Below are positions 3,488 to 47,078 of a stretch of 64,000 nt of DNA, piece after piece. A program made the translations under genes and the position numbers. The notes under the pieces were generated by a model that saw nothing but the letters and a program-made list of their open reading frames with translations, ran no database searches and was not told the origin of the DNA. Where the stretch lies: sequence record OR529409.1; one strand, 5' to 3'. Every line of letters starts with the position of its first letter. Positions within the stretch are counted from its first letter, which is position 1.

Positions 3488-5065
3488 GTGAACGTTCGTG
3501 GCGTAAAAGTAAAAGCAGAAACCCGTCAAATTATTGATAACACCGTAGAGCTCGTTGCAACCGCGGTAACCTCGACCATGGGCCCTAACGGCAAGCTGGT
3601 TGTTATTGACGAAACGGGTAATCCTAAAATGACCAAGGATGGGGTGACAGTAGCGCGCTCTATCCGTTTGGATGATCGGGCAATGGACATCATCGCCAAG
3701 ATGATCACCGAAGCCTCGATCAAAACGGATGCCGAATGTGGCGATGGGACCACCACCACTGTATTCTTAACAAGAGCGTTTTATAACGCCTTTAAAGATA
3801 AACTGGATTTCATGACCAAACGCCGGGTGGAAGAGTTAACCAAAGAAACGATCGAAATGCTCAAAGGAATGACGAAGGTTATTTCTCTTGATAGCCCAGT
3901 CCTTCACAATCTGGCGTTAACAACCAGTAATAACGATCTGGATATCGTGGATAAACTCTACGATATCTTTAAGACCATACCTGATCCCATGATTGATTAT
4001 CGTCGGGGTGTAACAGGTATTGACGAGATCGAATACAGTAAGGGTAAGGAATTCACAGGCGGGTACGCACATCCCACTTTCACTAAAGACGGAAGTGGTA
4101 GCCCGATTACGATTGAATCGGGTTATGCGTGCATCTTTGAAGGGAAGTTCAGTATTCCAGATGACGAGTCGGAATTCCTGAAGCTCTTCGATGAGATCAC
4201 TGAAAGGGGATATCGTCAGACTGTTGTTATCGCACGTGAATTCGACGAACACACCCTGATGGTGATGAACAAAATGAATCACGTTATGCTGACGCAGAAA
4301 CTGGTGGAGGAACCGGTTTTCATTCCCGTGCGGGTTCAGGCTATCGGAACAGCGGGAGTGGGGATCATTGGAGATATTGCAACGGTACTGGGATTAAACC
4401 AGGATGTGGACTATTCAGGTTGGAAGTCTCGCAACTATGAAGTACGCCCCATTGAAAACGTTGTAGTGAAAGGCGCGCTATTCTTTGTGGGTAGCGTGTC
4501 CGATGATGTCTCGGAACGTACAGTAAAGCGTATCGCGCAAATTAAAGATCAAATCGATAACTTGCCAGCTGCTCAGAAACACACGCCTTTGGCGAAGATC
4601 CTGAGACACCGTATCTCTACTCTGATGGGTAACCGAGTGACTGTAACCGTTGGAGGAGAAACCGCTTCCGACATCAAAGAACGACTGGATCGATTTGAAG
4701 ACGTCGGTCGGGCTATCGCATCAGCGTTAACTAACGGCGTCCTTCCGGGCATTGGTTATTCATTGGCTTATGTTGGTAGTGAGCTGGTGAAGAAATATCC
4801 TGACGATTCTATAGTGAAACTGTACGCCGATGTATTGGGCGAGCAGCTTCACATGTTGATGGGTCGGGAATTCAATGATCCTGAATTAGTCTATGTCAAT
4901 CTGGCTACTGGGGAAACCGGTAAGCATCCTCAAGACATCAACGTCTGGGATGCGCAGTTAGCCACAGTCACTGCGTTAAGGGCTGGTGTCAGCACTGCTA
5001 TCTCTTTGGCGAGCACCGATACGTTAATTATCGGTAGTCGTGCAGGTGGTGCGGATATTCCCTGA
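3488..5065 (+). CDS. groEL: Phage-encoded GroEL-like chaperonin
   Basis: TMGPNG, KDGVTVA, GDGTTT and GGET..KERLDRFED motifs; 525 aa; GTG start with AGGAG RBS; no GGM tail. Confidence 0.95.
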   Translation: MNVRGVKVKAETRQIIDNTVELVATAVTSTMGPNGKLVVIDETGNPKMTKDGVTVARSIRLDDRAMDIIAKMITEASIKTDAECGDGTTTTVFLTRAFYNAFKDKLDFMTKRRVEELTKETIEMLKGMTKVISLDSPVLHNLALTTSNNDLDIVDKLYDIFKTIPDPMIDYRRGVTGIDEIEYSKGKEFTGGYAHPTFTKDGSGSPITIESGYACIFEGKFSIPDDESEFLKLFDEITERGYRQTVVIAREFDEHTLMVMNKMNHVMLTQKLVEEPVFIPVRVQAIGTAGVGIIGDIATVLGLNQDVDYSGWKSRNYEVRPIENVVVKGALFFVGSVSDDVSERTVKRIAQIKDQIDNLPAAQKHTPLAKILRHRISTLMGNRVTVTVGGETASDIKERLDRFEDVGRAIASALTNGVLPGIGYSLAYVGSELVKKYPDDSIVKLYADVLGEQLHMLMGREFNDPELVYVNLATGETGKHPQDINVWDAQLATVTALRAGVSTAISLASTDTLIIGSRAGGADIP

Positions 5066-5074
5066 TGCGTTTTA

Positions 5075-5092
5075 GGGGAAGGAAACTTCCCC
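5075..5092 (+). terminator. GNRA stem-loop after groEL
   Basis: GGGGAAG-GAAA-CTTCCCC; no U-tract, so it may be a stabilising stem rather than a terminator. Confidence 0.45.
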
Positions 5093-5107
5093 ATTGGGAG
5101 AATTTTT

Positions 5108-5365
5108 ATGGGCGTTAACACTTCGTCAATTAAAAATTCTAATAATAGACAACATAATAATTACAGCGATTCATCCTCCGCTCCGATTCAGTTGGATCGT
5201 TCGGGGGAAATTGTCGACGCCAGAACTAAGCTAACAGTTACTGGTGAAATTCCTCTTCGAAAGTTACCCACTTTCTCAAACCCACCGCAAAGAACAATAA
5301 GAGACGATAAAAAACCTTCATCACTCTGGGGGATGGTTAGAGCTCTGTTCTTTGTATTCATGTGA
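5108..5365 (+). CDS. Small hypothetical protein with a hydrophobic C-terminus
   Basis: GGGAG RBS; polar low-complexity body ending LWGMVRALFFVFM. Confidence 0.6.
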   Translation: MGVNTSSIKNSNNRQHNNYSDSSSAPIQLDRSGEIVDARTKLTVTGEIPLRKLPTFSNPPQRTIRDDKKPSSLWGMVRALFFVFM

Positions 5366-5368
5366 TAC

Positions 5369-5398
5369 TATTCCTCTACCCACGTGGGTAGAGGAATA
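5369..5398. repeat. Perfect 30-bp palindrome / terminator hairpin
   Basis: TATTCCTCTACCCAC|GTGGGTAGAGGAATA with no spacer, followed by T-tracts. Confidence 0.9.
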
Positions 5399-5432
5399 AT
5401 AACGCTTTTTATTTTTTAAGGTTATCTCACTC

Positions 5433-5471
5433 ATGGCTAAAATTTATTTCTATTACTCCTCTATTGTATAG
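5433..5471 (+). pseudogene. tdk: Orphaned 5' stub of thymidine kinase (MAKIYFYYSSIV*)
   Basis: AAGGT RBS; translation matches the Tdk N-terminus (E. coli MAQLYFYYSAMNAGK) and is an imperfect repeat of 6465..6496. Confidence 0.8.
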
Positions 5472-5496
5472 TAGAAACTATTATGGGGAAATAGAA

Positions 5497-6465
5497 ATGT
5501 CGAAAATTAGTGGTTACAAAGAACATCCGGTAATAAAAAACCTTTTCATCCATCCTACGGAAGATAATCACGTCCTGTATGTTAGGAAGAAAAAAGTATC
5601 TCGGATAAAGACCCATGTCGGTAAACGCGGATACGTTATTTTTACTATGTGGTTAAATGGGAAATCCAAGGGTTTTCGCTTCCACAAATTGAAAGCCGAA
5701 ACGTATCTCAAGAAACCCAGTTCAGACCACACCCTAGTCGTAAATCATAAGGACCATGTTAAGATCAATAACGATCTCGATAACCTAGAATGGGGGACTC
5801 AAAAAGAGAATGTCGATCATTCATTAAATATCCGTCAAAAGCTTTGTCCCCTCTATCGGATAATGGATTTGACCACGGGGAGATGGTGTACAGCCGGTAG
5901 TCGTAAAGGGGTGATCGAAATGCTAGCTTGTACCCAACGACAACTCTCTAACCATATTAAAGACCCTCGCTATCCATTGCTATTCAAGTGGGAAGTAACA
6001 AGGGGTTTTACTTGGAATCTTTCAAAAGATGATGTAGGTAAATATAACCCACGAGAGCTTCTTCCTTATGTGGTAGAAAAGAATGGCGTCGTTTTTTACC
6101 TGGCGACATTAGCTGAAGTTGGTGAATTGACAAAGATCACTAAATACAATATTACAGTTGCTTTGAAAAATCAACCAATTCTGCACGCCAAGGGATTCAG
6201 CATTCGGTTTATTAATTCTTATGAAGAGTGGATGAAGACTGTTATTGGGAAGTCCTATATCGATACCATGTTAAATAAAAGTAATAGAAATAAAAAACAG
6301 ATCGAGGTAATAAACACTCTTACGGAGGAGAAAACCACGTTAAACGGAATTATGGAATTAATGGAACTGACTAATTATTCACGACCTACCATCGACAGGG
6401 CAATGAAAAATATGTGTGAAGATGGGTGGGTGACTTTCAAAAATCTAAAGATAAGGTTTATTTAA
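5497..6465 (+). mobile_element. Free-standing HNH homing endonuclease gene
   Basis: HKLKAETY...VVNHKDHVKINNDLDNLEWGTQKENVDH (HNH_3 type) plus C-terminal DNA-binding-like repeats; flanked by duplicated tdk 5' ends. Confidence 0.9.
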
Positions 6466-7052
6466 TGGCTAAGGTATTTTTCAATTACGCTGCGATGAAT
6501 TCTGGGAAGACTACTGGTTTGCTGCAATCAGCCTATAATTACGTTGAAAGAGGAATGTCAGTCTTACTTCTTAAACCTAAACTCGATAATAGAGAAGGAA
6601 CCGATCCACTAATTAAATCAAGAATAGGATTAGAAAGCGAGTGTGTTTTTATTCCTGATGATGGGGATGAATTAGTCGACCTCATTCATAATAACAAAGG
6701 TGTTTCGGCGATATTCATCGACGAGGTTCAGTTCGTTCCAGTGCGGGTGCTTAGTGCCATCATGGTGATGTGTGACACCATGGATATTCCTCTTCTTTGC
6801 TACGGTCTCCGTAACGCTTATGACGGTAAGGGATTCCCGGGATCTGATTTCTTATTACGTCACGCTGATAAACTGGTCGAATGCAAATCAATTTGTTGGT
6901 GCGGTAAAAAGGCCACTCACAACATGATGGTTGTCGATGGGAAAGTGGTAAGGGAAACCACATCAGGGGGAAATATGGTTGTCGGCGGTAATGAACTGTA
7001 TCACGCCGTATGTCGTCAGCATTTCTTCGAAGGTAAATACAAAGACGATTAA
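6465..7052 (+). CDS. tdk: Thymidine kinase
   Basis: AMNSGKT P-loop, IDEVQF, YGLR, Zn cysteines CWCG..AVCRQHF; start overlaps the HNH stop (TAATG). Confidence 0.97.
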   Translation: MAKVFFNYAAMNSGKTTGLLQSAYNYVERGMSVLLLKPKLDNREGTDPLIKSRIGLESECVFIPDDGDELVDLIHNNKGVSAIFIDEVQFVPVRVLSAIMVMCDTMDIPLLCYGLRNAYDGKGFPGSDFLLRHADKLVECKSICWCGKKATHNMMVVDGKVVRETTSGGNMVVGGNELYHAVCRQHFFEGKYKDD

Positions 7053-26994: not shown

Positions 26995-27006
26995 CCCACC
27001 GTATGG

Positions 27007-30000
27007 TTATTTGCTCGTATACCCCATCCTAGGATCTGGAGCTTTCTGGTTCTGGATTTCTTTAAGCAATTGAGCGAGTAAATCGTTAGTTCTTCCTTGG
27101 GCCTGAACTTGAGCCGTTGCGACCGGATCGGGTTGCTGAACCGGTTTAGCCAACGGAGTTGGCGGCGCAGAAGTACTTTGCTCAGTGGGGACCTTAACAC
27201 GATTAAGTGGGTTGGCCGGATCGGATTTGTACGCGACCGATCCCTCACTCACCGGAGTAGAAGGCACAGCTCCGATAGGTTTAGGTCCTTGATTAACCGA
27301 CGGAGTAGTAATCGCTGAAACTGCCGCGACACTGTTAGCTGTTCCTACGTTTTCCGATTTCATCGTAGGCGGTTTGGCGTCAGGGCTGACAGAGGAAACC
27401 GAACTCGGAGGAGTTTCCCCAGAAGAGGAAGGCGTCGCTCCAGCATTAGGATCCACCGTCAACTCATTGGAAGTCAAACGTTTCATATACTGCTGATAAA
27501 GTCTTGTCCTCGCCGGCATATCAGGCAAGCCGTTGGGGTTAAGTCCTTGAGCCGCATATTCAAACGAGTTGTTCTTCACAATGGACTGAAGTCGTTTACC
27601 GTTACTGCCGTTAGAGAGATACCAGATCAAGGTTTTCGCCATGACTTCTGGATCAGTGGAAACCAACTCTGGATTCTTAACGAGGTCTTTCCCCGCATAC
27701 TGAGAGGCAGCTCTGAAGTTATCCTTACCCGTAAGCTGAATGAACCCACGACCTCTGTAGAGCCATCCATCGTTAGGGCCGCTGTTACCCATCCTACCGC
27801 CGTAAACCGCGTTAGCGATGGCCTGAGGACCCCCAGCTACGATCTGCTGAGCCTGCGCCATGGACTTCACTCTACCTGGGAAAATTTCCAACAACCGACC
27901 TGGCTTGTAGTTCATGCCTTCCGCAGTATTTTTAAATCCCCCGCTTTCATAGTTAGCCAGAGCCAACATTTCAGCAATAAGACGAGGATCCGTGAAGCCG
28001 GCCTTAATCATCTCCTTCATGATTAATTGCTCTGCGGCTTTCTGGGGAACGCTAACACCTTTGTCTCCACCTCCCGACCCGCCTACCGGAGTGACGCCAG
28101 AAAGATCAACTGTCGACGTATCGGTATTACCCGTAATAGGTTTATAGTTGATAACTGGCTGACCACCCGCGATGACGTTATCACTCGTTGCAGCAGTCGC
28201 AACAGCCTGATTTAATCCACCCTCACCCATTGAGTGAGCCGAAGTATACGGAACGACTTCTTTAGCTCCAGAAGCTTTAACTTCTTTGTCACCAAAATTC
28301 AATTTCGCGTTCTTCGCGGCGGTATCGAGGTTATTAACGATTGCTTTAACCTGAGGTGTGATCGACCCAGAAGTTGTATTAGGGAACGGCGACCATTTAA
28401 CCTCCCAAACGGAAGTTGGGGTTTTACCGATATTCACTTTGAGCCCTAAAAGCTCTTTTGCGAAATCAAAAGCGTTAGTGGCAGTCATGGACTTCCAACC
28501 CGCGCTTGGTTTCACCCCCCTCATGATCCTCACGTATTTCACCCACGCCATACAGACTGGGAGGAAACGATCCCTGAACCACGTACACCATTGGTTAGCT
28601 TGGTCATCGGTTATTCTGAATGAGTTCTTAAAGAGGTTATACACCGCACCTGTGGTAGAAGTAAATCTTGCATCGTTACCGATTACACTGATGTAATCCT
28701 CACAATACCGTTCTAACTTCAACACAGCTTCAACACGCCATGGGATGTGTTCCGTATCACCGTAGGCGGCTAATCTCAATGCGGTTATCCCGGCCAGAGG
28801 TTTATCGCCCCCTGGTAAAAGATCGGTGATGTTGATTTCCATGACCGATTTTGTTACCGGATAACGTTTATTGATCTCTTCAATATCAGAACGATCCTCG
28901 TACGTCCCACCCACTCTCATTTTAAGACTAGACCACCAACCTGCCTTCTCAGATTTTTCAACCTGTTCGGCGGAGGTCTTCATGGTCACGACGCCTTCTT
29001 TCTCTATCCCCTCAGCTGTTCTTCCGTGTCTTTCGTTAAAGCTTTTCAGTTCGTCCAAATACAGCCTAACCTGATTAATGGTTTGGTCTTTACCCATTAT
29101 AGGTGTGGCTTCATCGAACTGAGCGGCTATCTGATAAGGATAAGGATTGATTGTACCGATCCTGTCGTTGATGGTGGAAACAGTAGAGTACAATTTAGCG
29201 TCGGTCGATTTATCGAACGTCTCAAAATCCCTGTACCCCGCGGTATCGATCGCAGAAGCGTAAGTCAGGAAAATAGGTTTGAAACGAAGATTAAACCAAG
29301 TGAAGTAAGCCTGCTGCTGGCCCTTGTCATTGGCTTGAGGTATGAAGCTTTGGAATATCTGTTCGAGAGGGGCTGATTTAGCTATTGAAGCCACCCCAGC
29401 GGTTACGACGACATATTCACGTAATGCTTCTTCGGCAGATCTGATTTTAGCAGCTAAATCTGACTCGACGTCCTTGATACCATATTGAGCCATACGAAGT
29501 TTGAACTGCGACCCTTTGCCTTTGGCGTAATACTTATAGATCAAATACCCGGCGCCTGCAACTGCCCCAATCCCCAACGTCACTGGATTAAATAACAGAG
29601 GAGCGACGGCAGTAGCCAAAGCACCTGTACCCGATACAATAGCCGACCCGGCAGCACTCGCACCAGAAGCAATAGCTGATCCGATCCCGAGGTTAATCCC
29701 CATAGCCGACATGGCGCTAGAACCTAAAGATACTGCTGAGGCTGCAGTAAGCGTGTTGCTCGCTACATCCTTCCAGTTAGTGCCTTCGTGCTCTTCATTG
29801 GTAGAGTCGAGATACATTCCTAATCCAGCGGTAGCCAAACCTGCTAAGCCGAATTTAAATGCTCTTCCTCTACCTACCCTACCGCCTCTGGTTCTTCTTC
29901 CTCTACGTCGTCCTGAAGCCCCTCCTGCGGCATCAACGATATCGTCAACACCATCAGATGCCCGGCGACCTAATAGGCCGACAGTAAGGATCTTAGCTAA

Positions 30001-33000
30001 CGACGTCAATCCACCTACAATAGCAGGCAGAGTAGTAATACCGAGAGTTAAGAATTTGGAGAGCTTAGCGCCGAGTCCGACGACCCCGCCCAAAATTGTT
30101 CCCATGGGGTTCTTAACGAGACCCAGGAGCCCATTAAGGAATCCACCGCCTTTCTTCTCTCCATCTGGAGAACCAGAACCCCTCTCTCCCTCTCCACGAC
30201 CGGCAAGATCGATGATGGCGTCTTGATACCGTGATTCACGTTCAGCTTTAGCTTTACGCTCCTTATCTTCTAAGGAGTTTAAGCGAACATCATCCGTATT
30301 TCCCATTCGGCTTGTTTCATTAACAATATCAGCCTTGATATCCGGCATGTCGTTAATGTCATAACCAAACTTACGGCAAAGCAGAGCGTAAATACGATCG
30401 ACCGAATTGGTAATAGGTGTATAGTCCGCGGTTACAAGATCGTTGATCTTATCTCCAGCTCGCTTACCGTAACCTTTAGCTCGGTCTCCCAGTTTCCTGC
30501 CCAGGTCAAGAAGTTTACCACCCATTACTCCCGTCATACGTTTGAGGGATTCTATTTTCATCCCCCCAGATGTAATGAGTCCATCCTCGTATTCGGCTTG
30601 GGTAATAATAACGTCGCCGTTCTCGTCATATACCGGTCCATCGATATCTCTCCAACCCTTTACAGGAACGACACTACCGTTCAAACGTTTGAAGTATTTA
30701 CCATTCTCAAAACCCTTCCTTGTCAGAACAGGGGAATCCTCTCCGACTCGATAAACATCCATTTGGGTTATTCGATTGGTAATACCCTGACCTATACCTT
30801 TCAATCGGTTAAGAGGATCCAGCCAGTTAAAGAGTTTTAACCCGGCTGATTTCACCGCGTTTAAGCCACGAAGTACGACCGCTTTGCCTTCGGCACTGAA
30901 CAGTTTGCCCGAAAGACGTTTAGCGGAGATCACGACCTTGGTTCCGAGATCAACGATCGATCCCTTGATCTCTTTCCAACTGGTAATGATTTTCTTTAAC
31001 ACTTTGTCGTAATACTGACGGGCTCTGAGTTTACGCGCTTCGAGTATCGGATCTTCACTCTCCCCATCGTAAATGTCTTCATCGTCACTGACGTCTCTGG
31101 CGTCCGCCATACTACGAACTTTGGTATATAGCGCCCAGGCTGCAGCACCGCCACCGATCAACGCCGCTGTTTTAGGATCGTGAATCGCCAATCCCGCTAA
31201 CCCACCTAACATCCCACCCAGCATCAGTGGTTCGTGAGCCAGCAGTTTATCCATGCCAGCACTGAAAATATCCTTAATCCCACCAAGACTTTTAATGCGG
31301 TCGAGGATGGTTTTCTTCTGTGCGGTATCAGCGGCATCTTCAGCATCAGTTTTGGGCTTATTCACCTCGGCTGGGTGACGAGAAAGGATTTGTTTCAGGA
31401 CTTCCAATTGTTCCTGATTAATATCCCTTATTCCCATTACAGAATCCGTTAAAGATTTGACTTGCTCTGGGCTTAATCCATTTCCGTCTTGTCTGCCGGG
31501 AATCCCGAGTTTAAGCTGCTCGGTGAGTTCCGATAGGGCGGTAACCAGTTTGCCGGAATCCTTCCCGGACAACCCACGACGGTTATTGATAATGGTTTTC
31601 GAATTACCCCCGCCCATTCCACCGCGAGTAGGGAGTGGGGTCACGTCATCCTCTTCGATAAGGCCTTCGTTACCATTAAGCTCCGATTTTAATCGGTCCC
31701 ATATCGCATCGGTGTTAAAGAAATCTGACCCGTTTTCACTATTAATCAAATTCATTTCTCTTAATAGTGGATCGTAACCAGCGTTTCGTAACAGATCGAT
31801 TTGCTGAGAAATATTAGGGAGATAACCTTTGAGGTTCTTGGCTCGCAGACTAAGATCGGCCGCCAAACGTTTACTTTTAGCGGTCGGCATGTTCAACTGA
31901 GCTTTAATACCAGCCAGCCCAGATTTTTTAGCCGCTTCAATATGCTGGTCGGTTAACCTGAACGACCCCCGCATCACTTGTTCAATTTCTTTACGAATCG
32001 ATGGGGTTAGCCCGTCTTCGTCTTCCATCCCGAAATAGTTGAACGGGTTGAATCCCTTATCTTGGTCGACGTCTCTCGCCAAACGATAAGATAAGAAACG
32101 TTTAGCTTCTGGTGACAGCGTTCCATTTTTGTCAATGGCAGAAACCATATCGGCTGTACCTGAGGCCAGCCCACTAAATTCTCTACCGTTCAACAGATTA
32201 CGCTTAACGGCATTTTGGGTTTGTTTATGACTTAAGAACTTCCCGCTACGGTAATCGAAACGTTCTTCTTTCAGGTTATCGTTACCCGTACGAATTTTTT
32301 CCAGGCTCAGATGAAGCTTAGCGAACCACCCAGGAATGATTTCATTTAACGTACGATCGGATTGACTACTCCAGTAGCTGGGTTGAGTCAAATCCATCAA
32401 GTTACGTTTCTTGAGTTCGTACTGTTTACCACGGGAATCGTTGATATTAAAAGAAAGATCGTTTAATCTATTTCCCAGAAAATTTTTACCTGTTTGTTTT
32501 AAACGCCACGCACTTTCACTTAATGGTTTTTCACCGGGAGCAAGTGAGTCAAGGTAATCGTCGTAGGTAGAAAAGTCTTCTTCGTAGTTAGCGTTATTGC
32601 GGAGAATGGTTCCTGCTAAACCAGCCGCGTTAGTTCCAGCGTATGACAGAACGCTGCCCAACTGTTCCAACTTGCGGTATTGCCGGCGGATGTTTTTGGC
32701 TTCTTTTGGATAGAGGGTCGCAAGTTTATTAATAAGCTTAGCGCCCTGCCCAGATTTAAAGAAAGCTGGTCCTCTCTCAATGACCTCGTTAGCTAGCATC
32801 TGCCCGATAATGGTTCCCATATTGAGACCCATTCCTTCGGACATCTCCATCCCCATTCTACCCGCGCCAACCATTCCGCTTAAACCAGAAAGCATTCCTT
32901 CTCTGGCTTCTTTACCGAACGTCTCGGACAGATAACCCATCACCCCACCGGACCTACGTCCGATTGTGGAGAAGATGGAATCACGCAATCTACCTTTAGC

Positions 33001-33813
33001 TGCCATAGCCAGGGAAGTTTTCTCGTAATCACTCTTACCCGAATTAAGAGTGATCTTTTTAAGCTCGTCAATCTGACGATGCATCGAGGCTTCCATGAAC
33101 TTGTAGTATTTAGCGTTGGTTAAATGCATCCGAGCCAATAAGTTGATTTTAACCGCATCGTTCTTAGCCTGGATTTTATTCTGGTAACGCAAAATACCTT
33201 GAAGGGTGGTCGAGATCCCGCCTAACAGCGAATTGGTTGCTTGTTGCTGAGCTAATTGACGACCGCCAACTACCGCGGTCATGTTGTTGATAGCCCGCCC
33301 AATACCCACCATTGTTCCTGTCTGCTGGGCCGTAACTCCGCTTATAAAACCGGCTAAGCCATCTTCATCGACTTCTCCCATACTTGGATCAGAAGGCGTG
33401 TATCCTCCTTGATCCCAATGGCTAAAGTCCTTATTGCTGAAGGTCTCCAACCCCTGGGCAATTTTATTAGGAACCTTGTCGCCGTGGCGGTCTAAGGTCA
33501 TCTGAGCAATTGCCTGGAGATCTTCCACCATATCTTTTGATCCGGCTTTGACCTCACTTAGGATCTCCTGCTTCTTCCAATCAAACTCTCTTTTTAAATC
33601 AAAGACAGTCCCAAATGATTTTGGGAGGAGCATTTTAGCCGTTCTCAACCTACCTTCTGAACTTCCTATCGTACCGCTGTGGAGCTCACTGAGAAAACCA
33701 CTCCCCATGCTCGCAAAGAAACCTTTTTTAGGTGCGTTATCGAAGTCGAAGTCGAAATCTATATCGCCGGCGAACGGGTCGTCTCCCCAATCGTCGAAAT
33801 CATCTTTAGCCAT
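27007..33813 (-). CDS. Tail tape measure protein with a C-terminal GH19 (chitinase/lysozyme-like) domain
   Basis: 2268 aa, divergent from vRNAP beta'; YESGGF..EGMNY..YGGRMGN..GWLYRGRGFIQLTGKDNF GH19 motif at about 27480..28020; central hydrophobic G/A-rich segments. Confidence 0.9.
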   Translation of the reverse strand: MAKDDFDDWGDDPFAGDIDFDFDFDNAPKKGFFASMGSGFLSELHSGTIGSSEGRLRTAKMLLPKSFGTVFDLKREFDWKKQEILSEVKAGSKDMVEDLQAIAQMTLDRHGDKVPNKIAQGLETFSNKDFSHWDQGGYTPSDPSMGEVDEDGLAGFISGVTAQQTGTMVGIGRAINNMTAVVGGRQLAQQQATNSLLGGISTTLQGILRYQNKIQAKNDAVKINLLARMHLTNAKYYKFMEASMHRQIDELKKITLNSGKSDYEKTSLAMAAKGRLRDSIFSTIGRRSGGVMGYLSETFGKEAREGMLSGLSGMVGAGRMGMEMSEGMGLNMGTIIGQMLANEVIERGPAFFKSGQGAKLINKLATLYPKEAKNIRRQYRKLEQLGSVLSYAGTNAAGLAGTILRNNANYEEDFSTYDDYLDSLAPGEKPLSESAWRLKQTGKNFLGNRLNDLSFNINDSRGKQYELKKRNLMDLTQPSYWSSQSDRTLNEIIPGWFAKLHLSLEKIRTGNDNLKEERFDYRSGKFLSHKQTQNAVKRNLLNGREFSGLASGTADMVSAIDKNGTLSPEAKRFLSYRLARDVDQDKGFNPFNYFGMEDEDGLTPSIRKEIEQVMRGSFRLTDQHIEAAKKSGLAGIKAQLNMPTAKSKRLAADLSLRAKNLKGYLPNISQQIDLLRNAGYDPLLREMNLINSENGSDFFNTDAIWDRLKSELNGNEGLIEEDDVTPLPTRGGMGGGNSKTIINNRRGLSGKDSGKLVTALSELTEQLKLGIPGRQDGNGLSPEQVKSLTDSVMGIRDINQEQLEVLKQILSRHPAEVNKPKTDAEDAADTAQKKTILDRIKSLGGIKDIFSAGMDKLLAHEPLMLGGMLGGLAGLAIHDPKTAALIGGGAAAWALYTKVRSMADARDVSDDEDIYDGESEDPILEARKLRARQYYDKVLKKIITSWKEIKGSIVDLGTKVVISAKRLSGKLFSAEGKAVVLRGLNAVKSAGLKLFNWLDPLNRLKGIGQGITNRITQMDVYRVGEDSPVLTRKGFENGKYFKRLNGSVVPVKGWRDIDGPVYDENGDVIITQAEYEDGLITSGGMKIESLKRMTGVMGGKLLDLGRKLGDRAKGYGKRAGDKINDLVTADYTPITNSVDRIYALLCRKFGYDINDMPDIKADIVNETSRMGNTDDVRLNSLEDKERKAKAERESRYQDAIIDLAGRGEGERGSGSPDGEKKGGGFLNGLLGLVKNPMGTILGGVVGLGAKLSKFLTLGITTLPAIVGGLTSLAKILTVGLLGRRASDGVDDIVDAAGGASGRRRGRRTRGGRVGRGRAFKFGLAGLATAGLGMYLDSTNEEHEGTNWKDVASNTLTAASAVSLGSSAMSAMGINLGIGSAIASGASAAGSAIVSGTGALATAVAPLLFNPVTLGIGAVAGAGYLIYKYYAKGKGSQFKLRMAQYGIKDVESDLAAKIRSAEEALREYVVVTAGVASIAKSAPLEQIFQSFIPQANDKGQQQAYFTWFNLRFKPIFLTYASAIDTAGYRDFETFDKSTDAKLYSTVSTINDRIGTINPYPYQIAAQFDEATPIMGKDQTINQVRLYLDELKSFNERHGRTAEGIEKEGVVTMKTSAEQVEKSEKAGWWSSLKMRVGGTYEDRSDIEEINKRYPVTKSVMEINITDLLPGGDKPLAGITALRLAAYGDTEHIPWRVEAVLKLERYCEDYISVIGNDARFTSTTGAVYNLFKNSFRITDDQANQWCTWFRDRFLPVCMAWVKYVRIMRGVKPSAGWKSMTATNAFDFAKELLGLKVNIGKTPTSVWEVKWSPFPNTTSGSITPQVKAIVNNLDTAAKNAKLNFGDKEVKASGAKEVVPYTSAHSMGEGGLNQAVATAATSDNVIAGGQPVINYKPITGNTDTSTVDLSGVTPVGGSGGGDKGVSVPQKAAEQLIMKEMIKAGFTDPRLIAEMLALANYESGGFKNTAEGMNYKPGRLLEIFPGRVKSMAQAQQIVAGGPQAIANAVYGGRMGNSGPNDGWLYRGRGFIQLTGKDNFRAASQYAGKDLVKNPELVSTDPEVMAKTLIWYLSNGSNGKRLQSIVKNNSFEYAAQGLNPNGLPDMPARTRLYQQYMKRLTSNELTVDPNAGATPSSSGETPPSSVSSVSPDAKPPTMKSENVGTANSVAAVSAITTPSVNQGPKPIGAVPSTPVSEGSVAYKSDPANPLNRVKVPTEQSTSAPPTPLAKPVQQPDPVATAQVQAQGRTNDLLAQLLKEIQNQKAPDPRMGYTSK

Positions 33814-45623: not shown

Positions 45624-46307
45624 ATGGATTCAATAAGCTGGTACGGAAAATTTAAAGCAGTAACCGAGGATTTGATTCCGGTTGATCTTTTACGGTACTG
45701 CTTATGGTCGATCACCTTTAATGACAAAGCGCATGATTTGAATCACGTTTATCATGTTTGCAGACAAGGAAACGATCTTGCATTATTACAAGATTACGAC
45801 GACCAGTGGCGTAGCCTGGTATTGGCGGGTTGCCTGCTTCACGACATTGGGTGTCGTTACGATCGTAAAACCCATCATCTCATAGCGTATGGGTTGGTCT
45901 TCGATTTAACCCATCGTTATTGTACCGGGCACTATTCGCCAGAAGAGACATTGATCATTGCGAAAAGTTGTCTGGAGCACAGAGCAAGCTGGGAAGGTGA
46001 TTTCAGTCATCCTATTTCAGAAACGGTTGCTCTGGCCGACAGAGGTATTCCTGATTTCGAGTTATACTGCAAACGAGCCGTTCAGTTCAGGTTAGATCAA
46101 AACCTGACTGAAGATGTTTTGGTAGAAGAAGTTCGCGTTCACATGTTAGACAAGTTCCTACCTAAGACGGGATACGTTTGGAAAAACTATCCTGAATTAG
46201 GATTGTCTTTATATGAACAAGAATGGAAAGTGTTCCACGATAAACTTAAAGACGAAGTTGTCTTTAGAGAGGCTGTACTAGAAGCGTACCGTAAATTAAA
46301 ATCTTAA
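45624..46307 (+). CDS. HD-domain phosphohydrolase
   Basis: HDLNHVYHV, LLHDIG, EHRAS and LADRG metal-binding motifs; AGGAG RBS before ATG 45624. Confidence 0.85.
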   Translation: MDSISWYGKFKAVTEDLIPVDLLRYCLWSITFNDKAHDLNHVYHVCRQGNDLALLQDYDDQWRSLVLAGCLLHDIGCRYDRKTHHLIAYGLVFDLTHRYCTGHYSPEETLIIAKSCLEHRASWEGDFSHPISETVALADRGIPDFELYCKRAVQFRLDQNLTEDVLVEEVRVHMLDKFLPKTGYVWKNYPELGLSLYEQEWKVFHDKLKDEVVFREAVLEAYRKLKS

Positions 46308-46364: not shown

Positions 46365-46859
46365 ATGATTATTTTACTTGCTGTTTTTGCTATTATCCTT
46401 TGTATTGGTTTTTGTTATAAAAAGATCAATATCAAAAACGACATCGGAATCAAGGTTAACAACGCCACAAAGATGGTCATCGATATTAACCTTGGTAAAA
46501 TTAAAGGCGAATTCAAGATCGTTAAACACAGTCGGTGTTTCAAACCCAGAGTCTCTCCTGGGTTAAACGGATTGGTTTATACTGTCCCTGTATTTTGCAC
46601 GTTATCCGAATTCATCACCGGCTTATATTCTGAAGAAATAAGACCTTACGACAAACAAAAAGATAAACACCTCTTAGACGTCGTCAGAGCCATCGTAGGG
46701 GCCGAATTAAAGGACGATGGTATGATTGCCTTATTCGACGACACGACCCTTTGTGAGACCGTAGAGAGAGCCAGAGAGTCATTTGTGATGAATAAGGATT
46801 ATTTCTTCTCCGAGAAGGGATGGAACCGAGGTAATGTTATTGCACCTATCAACCTTTAA
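46365..46859 (+). CDS. N-terminally anchored membrane protein
   Basis: MIILLAVFAIILCIGFCYKK signal-anchor; GAGGA RBS. Confidence 0.7.
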   Translation: MIILLAVFAIILCIGFCYKKINIKNDIGIKVNNATKMVIDINLGKIKGEFKIVKHSRCFKPRVSPGLNGLVYTVPVFCTLSEFITGLYSEEIRPYDKQKDKHLLDVVRAIVGAELKDDGMIALFDDTTLCETVERARESFVMNKDYFFSEKGWNRGNVIAPINL

Positions 46860-46873
46860 TTAAGGATTTTAAA

Positions 46874-47014
46874 ATGTCTGACATGTTTGACGTGGATCAA
46901 CTTAACAACCTGAACCTGGAAGCCGCTGAAGAGAAAGTCGAATCTCTTCGTGATGGTGGCGGTGAAGTTGTCGAGGCTTCCGATGAATGTGAAGGCGGCG
47001 CCTGCAAAATTTAA
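46874..47014 (+). CDS. 46-aa peptide mimicking the ribonucleotide reductase NrdB and NrdA C-terminal tails (not in ORF track)
   Basis: MSDMFDVDQLNNLNLEAAEEKVESLRDGGGEVVEASDECEGGACKI; AAGGA RBS, biased codons, terminator immediately after. Confidence 0.8.
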   Translation: MSDMFDVDQLNNLNLEAAEEKVESLRDGGGEVVEASDECEGGACKI

Positions 47015-47023
47015 AACGTGTAA

Positions 47024-47057
47024 TAACTCCTACTCCCCATGCGGGGAGTAGGAGTTA
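47024..47057. terminator. Bidirectional terminator hairpin (ACTCCTAC family)
   Basis: TAACTCCTACTCCCC-ATGC-GGGGAGTAGGAGTTA between convergent genes. Confidence 0.85.
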
Positions 47058-47078
47058 GCAGTACTTATTTTTTTTTTC

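What the first reader, a model, noticed from the sequence alone, without database searches (positions are those of the whole stretch)
46874..47014. 46-aa peptide fusing a ribonucleotide reductase beta-tail mimic to an alpha-tail redox dithiol: candidate RNR hijacker or inhibitor
Seen: an ORF below the track cutoff, with an AAGGA RBS and its own terminator, encoding MSDMFDVDQLNNLNLEAAEEKVESLRDGGGEVVEASDECEGGACKI. No nrdA body lies upstream or elsewhere in the window. Established (recalled E. coli sequences): NrdA ends ...TRDGAEDAQDDLVPSIQDDGCESGACKI, and its C754/C759 pair re-reduces the active site. NrdB ends ...EVDTDDLSNFQL, the segment that docks beta onto alpha and inhibits RNR as a free peptide. 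The ORF's C-half (RDG, acidic linker, CEGGACKI) matches the NrdA tail. Its N-part FDVDQLNNLNL aligns ungapped with VDTDDLSNFQL (5 of 11 identical, the rest mostly conservative). Inference: the peptide docks on a class Ia RNR alpha subunit through the beta-tail site and either delivers a trans-acting dithiol to boost dNTP output or blocks host alpha-beta assembly. tdk, tmk and an HD hydrolase in the same window fit nucleotide-pool control. Caveat: the beta-like motif lacks a free C-terminus.
Basis: partly seen in the sequence, partly recalled or inferred. Interest (0 to 1): 0.92.

Follow-up and report, generated by a model that had tools for sequence, protein, structure and literature searches.

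The report
Free-standing ribonucleotide reductase redox tail peptide
A jumbo phage with no ribonucleotide reductase of its own encodes a conserved 46-residue peptide whose end copies the electron-shuttling tail of the bacterial enzyme that makes DNA building blocks, and this portable tail belongs to an undescribed family found in many phages and in Neisseria.

Summary
The ORF at 46874-47014 is real. It has an AAGGA ribosome site, a strong terminator hairpin and strong purifying selection (dN/dS about 0.03 in its C-half). It is annotated only as 'hypothetical' in about 150 jumbo-phage records.

Its last 15 residues are a class Ia RNR alpha (NrdA) C-terminal redox tail: hhalign gives 97% probability, and the only PDB hits of the family profile are NrdA C-termini. 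The family has at least 74 clusters, in phiKZ-like phages and in Neisseriaceae/Moraxellaceae, where it lies between iscS and iscU.

The same module is also fused to a deoxyribonucleotidase-like domain and to a MazG-like domain. In one phage-like contig the nucleotidase fusion sits directly upstream of an NrdA that lacks the cysteine tail. Such tail-less NrdAs are rare (0 of 115 sampled phage NrdAs).

The window's phage has no nrdA, nrdB or redoxin gene, so the peptide must act on the host RNR or on the host thioredoxin/glutaredoxin relay.

The beta-tail likeness of the N-part is real for the E. coli-type NrdB tail (5 of 11 identities, shuffle p 0.003). It is absent at family level and in the best-linked relative.

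Whether the peptide boosts or blocks RNR is unresolved. I favour a trans-acting reductant shuttle.

The parts
46862..46866 (+). Ribosome-binding site AAGGA, 7 nt upstream of the ATG
   Evidence: Read directly. An RBS is annotated at the same place in phage Miami.
46874..47014 (+). 46-codon gene (stop included) for the free-standing RNR alpha-tail peptide
   Evidence: ORF list. Standalone homologues in 101 + 61 phage records. PHROG 10239, E 4.7e-5. 74 clusters found in 1.84 billion representatives.
46874..46948 (+). N-segment, codons 1-25: acidic, with conserved hydrophobic positions; predicted short helices; presumed docking element
   Evidence: Family columns: hydrophobic at positions 10 (94%), 15 (90%) and 22 (94%); acidic at 16 (89%). 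AF2 helices 7-11 and 15-27 at low confidence, pLDDT 59. Fast-evolving: dN 0.57 against L143.
46949..47011 (+). C-segment, codons 26-46: Gly-Gly hinge, acidic linker and redox tail
   Evidence: dN/dS about 0.03 (10 of 14.3 synonymous against 3 of 48.7 non-synonymous changes, window vs L143). G29 and G30 present in 97% of members.
46988..47011 (+). Terminal octapeptide CEGGACKI carrying the CX4C dithiol
   Evidence: Identical to the end of the ~760-residue NrdA ORFs of many Gammaproteobacteria. Cys39 in 98% and Cys44 in 100% of members. hhalign to NrdA tails 97%. PDB hits are NrdA C-termini only.
47024..47077 (.). Terminator-like hairpin (47024-47057) and T10 run (47068-47077) between convergent genes
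   Evidence: dG -29.9 kcal/mol, z -7.2. A terminator is annotated in Miami.
45624..46307 (+). Upstream gene of the same operon: HD-like phosphohydrolase (weak call)
   Evidence: Pfam HD E 0.0027, below the cut-off. Miami's note cites the OBP metal-dependent phosphohydrolase. An HD gene lies in the same gene run in FBKp24.
46365..46859 (+). Immediately upstream gene, 164 aa, hydrophobic N-terminus, no family
   Evidence: ORF list. No Pfam hit. A homologue is noted in Erwinia phage RisingSun.
47079..47975 (-). Convergent neighbour: tail tube protein (not part of the system; it bounds the operon)
   Evidence: Pfam Phage_TTP_14, E 9e-103.

Best explanation
The gene encodes a free, diffusible copy of the C-terminal redox tail of the class Ia ribonucleotide reductase alpha subunit.

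Shown: it is a translated gene under selection. Its last 15 residues are an NrdA tail. The same module occurs as a separate polypeptide beside an NrdA that lacks its own tail. The module travels with nucleotide-metabolism genes. This phage has neither an RNR nor a redoxin.

Inferred: the disordered CX4C end is reduced by host glutaredoxin 1 or thioredoxin, as the native NrdA tail is. It then exchanges with the active-site disulfide of host NrdA in trans. The conserved acidic-hydrophobic N-segment provides docking; the target is unproven, and NrdA is the most likely.

The phage depends wholly on the host for deoxyribose synthesis. I therefore commit to the reading that the peptide acts as an extra reductant shuttle that keeps host RNR turning over during infection, in the cytoplasm outside the phage nucleus.
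For: Tail identity:
- hhalign of the family against 28 NrdA C-termini gives 97%, E 1e-10.
- The family profile and a Neisseria member hit only class Ia alpha C-termini in the PDB, including the free 25-residue R1 peptide 1qfn_B.
- The family's end variants (CX4C, CX3C, CX2C, then K and I/L/V) parallel those of real NrdA tails.

Trans use:
- In L134 a nucleotidase-module fusion lies directly upstream of nrdA-nrdB, and that NrdA stops just after the conserved TRDG motif, with no cysteines. The same gene order is seen in three sequencing runs.
- Tail-less NrdA is rare: 0 of 115 sampled phage NrdAs. Among the 120 nearest relatives only one lineage lacks the tail.

Context:
- Fusions to a MazG-like and a deoxyribonucleotidase-like domain.
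- mazG is the next gene and thymidylate synthase lies upstream in SPN3US. dCMP deaminase is nearby in Alexandra. tdk, HD and DHH genes share the gene run in FBKp24.

This phage: no nrdA or nrdB and no CxxC redoxin ORF.

Selection: dN/dS 0.03.

Circumstantial: host trxB is a host factor for PCH45, a phage that carries a homologue.

Precedent: in the split class II RNR of P. aeruginosa, a separate NrdJb polypeptide carries out the dithiol exchange (PMC4520616).
Against: - Host NrdA already has its own tethered tail, so the gain from a free copy is not obvious. A free peptide is normally a poorer partner than a tethered one.
- No data on expression, binding or activity exist.
- The sign of the effect is not determined by any result here.
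- In Neisseria the gene sits in the isc operon and NrdA keeps a tail, which the shuttle idea does not explain.
- The L134 evidence comes from metagenomic contigs and from the other subtype of the module.
- Whether other peptide-bearing phages lack RNR was not tested.
Confidence: 0.45

Rival explanations
1. Tail decoy or inhibitor. The peptide competes with NrdA's own tail for the active site, or soaks up reduced glutaredoxin/thioredoxin, and so lowers host RNR output. This would be a bacterial/phage counterpart of the small disordered RNR regulators of yeast (Sml1 and Spd1, cited from my own knowledge). The phage would then live on salvage through its tdk, thymidylate synthase and DHFR.
For: Same tail identity as above. 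The partners fused to or next to the module (MazG-like, deoxyribonucleotidase, HD) are enzymes that destroy nucleotides, which fits pool reduction or remodelling. The phage carries salvage and dTMP genes but no RNR.
Against: A phage without RNR would be cutting its only de novo source of deoxyribose. In L134 the module is the only visible source of a tail for an otherwise intact NrdA/NrdB pair, which argues for a productive role. A conserved chromosomal copy in the Neisseria isc operon is hard to read as a constitutive inhibitor.
Confidence: 0.25
2. The N-segment docks in the groove of NrdA that normally holds the NrdB C-terminus, and the C-segment then reaches the active site. The outcome could be help or blockade.
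For: 5 of 11 identities with the E. coli NrdB end, shuffle p 0.003. NrdB ends beat 99.2% of 627 other C-termini on the window's N-part, and similarly for the P0004 and FBKp24 types. The hydrophobic triad at positions 10, 13 and 15 has the spacing of the NrdB end.
Against: PSSM of 54 NrdB tails: p 0.16-0.8 for the window. hhalign 0.3%. No NrdB hit in the PDB. The P0005 and SPN3US types show no likeness. The L134 module does not resemble its cognate NrdB tail. The motif is internal and in the opposite order relative to the inserted part. Several window lengths were tried, so the best p-value is optimistic.
Confidence: 0.15
3. Docking tag of a nucleotide-metabolism assembly. The module is mainly an address label that brings cargo (nucleotidase, MazG, unknown domains X and Y) to NrdA or to a redoxin. 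The free peptide regulates or competes for that site.
For: The module is attached to at least four unrelated N-terminal domains. It neighbours mazG in SPN3US.
Against: Most members, including this one, carry no cargo. No homologue of domains X or Y exists in this phage.
Confidence: 0.1
4. A thiol relay unrelated to RNR, for example serving Fe-S cluster assembly (IscS/IscU), that shares only the redoxin-recognition end with NrdA.
For: Conserved position between iscS and iscU in Neisseria and Eikenella. Redox-enzyme neighbours in Moraxella and Thalassolituus.
Against: No isc genes are seen near the phage copies. Direct adjacency to tail-less nrdA in L134. The nucleotide-metabolism context in phages.
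Confidence: 0.05

Closest known systems
C-terminal redox tail of class Ia RNR alpha (NrdA; the E. coli pair of cysteines near residue 754-759)
   Same: Same terminal octapeptide type (CX4C, then K and I/L), the same acidic run before it, and a disordered state. The profile match covers the last 15 columns.
   Different: It is not attached to the catalytic body. It carries a conserved N-segment that NrdA lacks. Here it is encoded by a phage with no RNR.
Split class II RNR NrdJa/NrdJb of Pseudomonas aeruginosa (PMC4520616)
   Same: A separate polypeptide mediates the reductive dithiol exchange for a catalytic subunit that lacks it. The L134 relative looks like the class Ia counterpart.
   Different: NrdJb is a sizeable protein encoded next to NrdJa and belongs to class II. 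The window's peptide is 46 residues with no cognate catalytic subunit in its genome.
Sml1 / Spd1 / Hug1-type small disordered RNR regulators of fungi (own knowledge)
   Same: Small, disordered, and act on the large subunit. Sml1 is reported to compete with the large subunit's own C-terminal tail.
   Different: No sequence relation (no Pfam hit at E up to 10). Those proteins carry no tail-like dithiol. They are inhibitors, whereas the sign here is unknown.
NrdB C-terminal peptide (the classical peptide inhibitor principle for RNR)
   Same: Acidic-hydrophobic short motif. The window's N-part matches the E. coli NrdB end at 5 of 11 residues.
   Different: Internal rather than C-terminal. No profile-level similarity. 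Not shared by all members.
R1 tail peptide bound to glutaredoxin 1 (PDB 1QFN, chain B)
   Same: A free 25-residue NrdA tail peptide is a recognised partner of a redoxin. It is among the best PDB hits of the family.
   Different: It is a laboratory fragment of NrdA, not a natural gene product. That the partner chain is glutaredoxin 1 rests on my own knowledge and on the citation context in PMC10897161.

Membership tests
Class Ia RNR alpha C-terminal redox tail (sequence module) | Two cysteines spaced by 2-4 residues within the last 8 residues, ending in K and I/L/V | tested here: met
   The window ends in CEGGACKI. 63 of 73 family representatives end this way. The same end types occur in real NrdAs.
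Class Ia RNR alpha C-terminal redox tail (sequence module) | Profile-level similarity to NrdA C-termini; named hits in structure databases | tested here: met
   hhalign 97%, E 1e-10 over 15 columns. The PDB hits of the profile are all NrdA C-termini, E 0.037-0.3. The window peptide alone gave no NrdA hit at E up to 10.
Class Ia RNR alpha C-terminal redox tail (sequence module) | Covalently attached to the RNR catalytic barrel | tested here: not met
   A free 46-residue product. No nrdA anywhere in the phage. No full-length NrdA among the 74 profile hits.
Class Ia RNR alpha C-terminal redox tail (sequence module) | Is reduced by thioredoxin/glutaredoxin and reduces the active-site disulfide | not testable with these tools
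   No complex prediction or assay is available here.
Split RNR (tail on a separate polypeptide, as NrdJa/NrdJb) | A tail-less catalytic subunit encoded in the same genome, next to the tail-bearing gene | tested here: not met
   Not met for the window (no RNR). Met for the relative L134.
NrdB C-terminal alpha-binding tail | Motif at the extreme C-terminus with a free carboxylate | tested here: not met
   The motif lies at residues 5-15 of 46.
NrdB C-terminal alpha-binding tail | Sequence similarity to NrdB ends beyond composition | tested here: inconclusive
   E. coli-type end: p 0.003-0.016. Empirical rank in the top 0.8%. PSSM p 0.16-0.8. hhalign 0.3%. L134 against its own NrdB: p 0.25-0.84.
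PHROG 10239 (phage protein family of unknown function) | HMM match over the full length | tested here: met
   E 4.7e-5, residues 4-46 on profile positions 6-47 of 47.
Sml1/Spd1-type RNR inhibitors | Sequence family membership | tested here: not met
   No Pfam family at E up to 10.
RiPP precursor peptide | Adjacent modifying enzyme genes (radical SAM, lanthipeptide synthetase, cyclodehydratase) | tested here: not met
   Neighbours are an HD-like gene, hypotheticals and the tail tube. In Neisseria they are iscS and iscU.

The most novel reading that the evidence does not exclude
Class Ia RNR has a hitherto unseen layer: its electron-shuttling tail exists as a mobile, free-standing module.
- Nucleus-forming jumbo phages that lack RNR deploy it to take control of host dNTP synthesis.
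- Some phages and at least one bacterial lineage have moved the tail off NrdA altogether and supply it in trans, sometimes on a nucleotidase.
- Neisseriaceae co-express a copy with the Fe-S assembly operon, linking iron-sulfur status to DNA precursor supply.
Probability: 0.3. Interest if true: 0.9.

Novelty: new variant of a known kind. Interest (0 to 1): 0.8.

Why it matters
RNR is the only de novo source of DNA precursors and is a drug target, including in Neisseria gonorrhoeae. How its active site is re-reduced is among the least explored parts of its cycle; the RNR literature itself says C-termini are poorly understood (PMC9669993).

A natural free tail would give three things:
- a phage tool aimed at a new point of host metabolism;
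- a class Ia counterpart of the split class II enzyme;
- a ready-made peptide ligand for the NrdA active-site channel and for glutaredoxin/thioredoxin.

It also gives a name to a 'hypothetical' gene present in about 150 sequenced jumbo phages and in most Neisseria genomes.

Tried and rejected
- Decayed nrdA fragment: rejected. dN/dS is 0.03, synonymous sites are saturated, and standalone ORFs are conserved across distant phages.
- N-segment as a relic of NrdA's last helix: rejected. hhalign aligns only the last 15 columns.
- Hidden RNR in the phage: none found by tblastn over the whole genome. Class II and III enzymes were not searched with their own queries, but no such gene is annotated in the parts of the two records I read.
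- Phage redoxin partner: a regex for CxxC redoxin motifs in ORFs of 60-200 aa found only one ORF, which I judged spurious.
- Fusion domains X (P0089/P0090/P0123) and Y (P0122/P0125/P0135/P0137): no Pfam or PHROG function and no homologue in this phage.
- The search for related loci gave few extra loci in viral and metagenome collections.
One Pfam call failed on a bad frame.
- Literature: no paper contains the octapeptide string. Nothing on free RNR tails in phages.
- Residue-by-residue view of the N. gonorrhoeae NrdA tail: only the bounds of the match could be seen.
- Whether other peptide-bearing phages (SPN3US, PCH45, FBKp24, Alexandra) carry an RNR elsewhere: not determined.
- RiPP precursor, metal-binding and DNA-mimic readings: no supporting neighbours or motifs.

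Full report
**1. What is there**

The window is 100% identical to Stenotrophomonas phage BUCTxx100 and 96-98% identical to Klebsiella phage Miami and its relatives. These are phiKZ-like phages; Miami is listed among chimallin-encoding, nucleus-forming phages.

The ORF 46874-47014 (+) encodes the 46 residues quoted. AAGGA lies 7 nt upstream of the ATG. A 15-bp hairpin (dG -29.9 kcal/mol, z -7.2) and a T10 run follow the stop. Miami's record annotates the same RBS, a 'hypothetical protein' and a terminator.

The gene ends a co-oriented run that includes a weak HD-like phosphohydrolase (Pfam E 0.0027). It converges on the tail tube (E 9e-103) and tail sheath genes.

**2. It is a real, selected gene**

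- tblastn finds standalone homologues in 101 phage records (Erwinia, Dickeya, Serratia PCH45, Yersinia phiR1-37, Klebsiella FBKp24 and others).
- A second subtype is found in 61 more records (SPN3US-like, CR5-like, Asesino-like).
- It matches PHROG 10239, function unknown. It has no Pfam family.
- Between the window and a metagenomic homologue (L143), the last 21 codons carry 10 of 14.3 possible synonymous changes against 3 of 48.7 non-synonymous ones, so dN/dS is about 0.03. Against the Erwinia phage copies the counts are 5-7 synonymous and 0-1 non-synonymous.
- The N-part changes fast (dN 0.57) but keeps a pattern. Across 64 family sequences, positions 10, 15 and 22 are hydrophobic in 90-94%, position 16 is acidic in 89%, G29 and G30 are kept in 97%, and Cys39 and Cys44 in 98-100%.
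- AlphaFold2 gives a low-confidence model (pLDDT 59) with helices at 7-11 and 15-27 and a disordered end.

**3. The C-half is an NrdA tail**

I back-translated the window's own last eight residues into a degenerate DNA pattern and scanned one genome per species.

- About 100 loci are the ends of roughly 760-residue ORFs that continue from the conserved YY-x-NTRDG motif. These ORFs sit upstream of nrdB. The Yersinia example matches E. coli R1 in the PDB at E 3e-62.
- hhalign of the peptide family against 28 such NrdA C-termini gives 97% probability and E 1e-10, limited to the last 15 columns. The N-segment is therefore not a relic of the NrdA body.
- Against the PDB, the family profile hits only class Ia alpha C-termini: E. 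coli R1 748-761, N. gonorrhoeae 7MDI 762-773, and the free 25-residue R1 peptide 1qfn_B (E 0.037-0.3).
- E. coli NrdA itself (fetched as L152) differs from the peptide's octapeptide at one residue.
- The family's end variants and their counts parallel those of true NrdAs. In the family: 19 CEGGACKI, 15 CAGGACKI, 8 CEGGACKL, and rare CX3C and CX2C forms. In true NrdAs.

**4. A wider family, and the key relative**

About 14 of the 120 genome hits were small free ORFs rather than NrdAs. They came from Neisseria, Moraxella and Thalassolituus.

- In Neisseria and Eikenella the 42-residue gene lies between iscS and iscU on the same strand.
- Elsewhere the context varies.
- 73 small 'hypothetical' proteins of Neisseriaceae/Moraxellaceae belong to this group.

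A full HMMER scan of 1.84 billion representative proteins with a 14-member profile found 74 proteins at E up to 1e-3. None is a full-length NrdA.

Some members carry the module as a C-terminal tail on larger proteins:
- a MazG-like pyrophosphohydrolase (P0111, PHROG 671, E 2e-30);
- a 5'-3' deoxyribonucleotidase-like domain (P0126, PHROG 2643, E 3e-15; phage relatives of this domain are annotated as nucleotidases);
- two unknown domains, X and Y.

P0126 is encoded in a 13-kb phage-like contig in this order: dNMP-kinase-like gene, DHFR, P0126, nrdA (1008 residues, with an intein), nrdB. That NrdA ends five residues after the conserved TRDG motif, with no cysteine tail. The same gene order is seen in three sequencing runs.

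Tail-less NrdA is rare.
- Of 115 complete phage NrdAs sampled from IMG/VR through the YYHNTRDG motif, all end in a cysteine pair.
- Of the 120 NrdAs closest to the L134 enzyme, only that enzyme and one bacterial chromosomal lineage lack the pair. The bacterial lineage has the order nrdA-nrdB-yfaE and comes from the same sample series.

A rare tail-less NrdA lying next to a rare free tail module is very unlikely by chance. It is the best evidence that the module can serve NrdA in trans. The known parallel is the split class II enzyme of P. aeruginosa, in which NrdJb mediates dithiol exchange.

**5. Context in phages**

The module keeps company with deoxynucleotide genes:
- mazG is the next gene and thymidylate synthase lies upstream in SPN3US;
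- dCMP deaminase lies three genes upstream in Alexandra;
- tdk, HD and DHH genes share the gene run in FBKp24, which also ends at convergent structural genes (baseplate wedge, tail sheath), as here.

The window's phage has thymidylate synthase, DHFR, tdk and a MazG homologue. It has no nrdA or nrdB and no CxxC redoxin ORF.

**6. The beta-tail claim**

Evidence for, using E. coli NrdB fetched by tools:
- It beats composition-preserving shuffles: p 0.003 for 11 residues, 0.016 for 8 and 0.009 for 15.
- Only 0.8% of the C-termini of 627 other ORFs from the same bacterial loci match the window's N-part as well as the median NrdB end. The P0004 and FBKp24 types behave alike.

Evidence against:
- A PSSM of 54 NrdB ends gives p 0.16-0.8 for the window.
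- hhalign gives 0.3%.
- The P0005 and SPN3US types show nothing.
- The L134 module does not resemble its own NrdB end (p 0.25-0.84).

I read this as a shared acidic-hydrophobic style, with a possibly lineage-specific likeness. It is not a defining feature of the family.

**7. Mechanism**

Shown:
- tail identity;
- selection on the protein sequence;
- one case of a module encoded as a separate protein beside a tail-less NrdA, which is genomic rather than functional evidence for trans use;
- a nucleotide-metabolism context;
- absence of RNR and redoxin genes in this phage.

Inferred:
- reduction by host Grx1 or Trx, and exchange with the NrdA active-site disulfide;
- docking through the N-segment;
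- a net positive effect on host dNDP synthesis.

The inhibitor reading (tail decoy) is the main rival. The evidence here does not decide between the two. The Neisseria isc location is unexplained. The report that host trxB is a host factor for PCH45 is compatible with the shuttle idea but not specific to it.

Noticed in passing
L032 5063-5191 (also L004, L007, L033, L042, L069, L074, L095): Neisseria and Eikenella carry a conserved 42-residue gene for the same tail module between iscS and iscU, on the same strand. Meanwhile N. gonorrhoeae NrdA (7MDI) keeps a tail of its own. Why an RNR-tail peptide sits in the Fe-S assembly operon is unexplained.
   Followed up: partly
L149 932-3208 and L150 934-3210: A bacterial chromosomal class Ia NrdA (nrdA-nrdB-yfaE operon, unknown gammaproteobacterium) ends without any cysteine pair. 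Its reductant route is unknown. It comes from the same sample series as the phage-like contig L134.
   Followed up: partly
L134 1215-6180: A phage-like contig with a deoxyribonucleotidase-tail fusion, an intein-containing tail-less nrdA and nrdB in a row, flanked by DHFR and a weak dNMP-kinase-like gene.
   Followed up: yes
P0089/P0090/P0123 and P0122/P0125/P0135/P0137 (e.g. L139 10001-10891, L130 2638-3141): Two unrelated domains of unknown function (about 180 and 115 residues) carry the phage-type module as a C-terminal tail in other jumbo-phage contigs. No Pfam or PHROG function, and no homologue in this phage.
   Followed up: partly
L151 4878-6071 (Salmonella phage SPN3US): In SPN3US the peptide gene is followed directly by a mazG pyrophosphohydrolase gene. 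In the metagenomic protein P0111 a MazG-like domain and the module are fused.
   Followed up: partly
whole window: The window is 100% identical to a record named Stenotrophomonas phage BUCTxx100, yet 96-98% identical to several Klebsiella and Raoultella phages. The stated host of that record may deserve a check.
   Followed up: no
window about 4500-6100 and about 6460-7050 (by offset from Miami's annotation, not re-measured): The phage encodes a GroEL-like chaperonin and a thymidine kinase. A 2268-residue 'chitinase/endolysin-like' gene lies at about 27000-33800 on the minus strand.
   Followed up: no
P0079, P0006: One database protein joins an IscU N-terminus to the peptide, and another repeats the tail motif twice. 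These are probably assembly or gene-calling artefacts around the Neisseria iscS-iscU spacer.
   Followed up: no
window 46365-46859: The gene just upstream of the peptide (164 aa, hydrophobic N-terminus) has no family. It ends 15 nt before the peptide's start and may be translationally linked.
   Followed up: no
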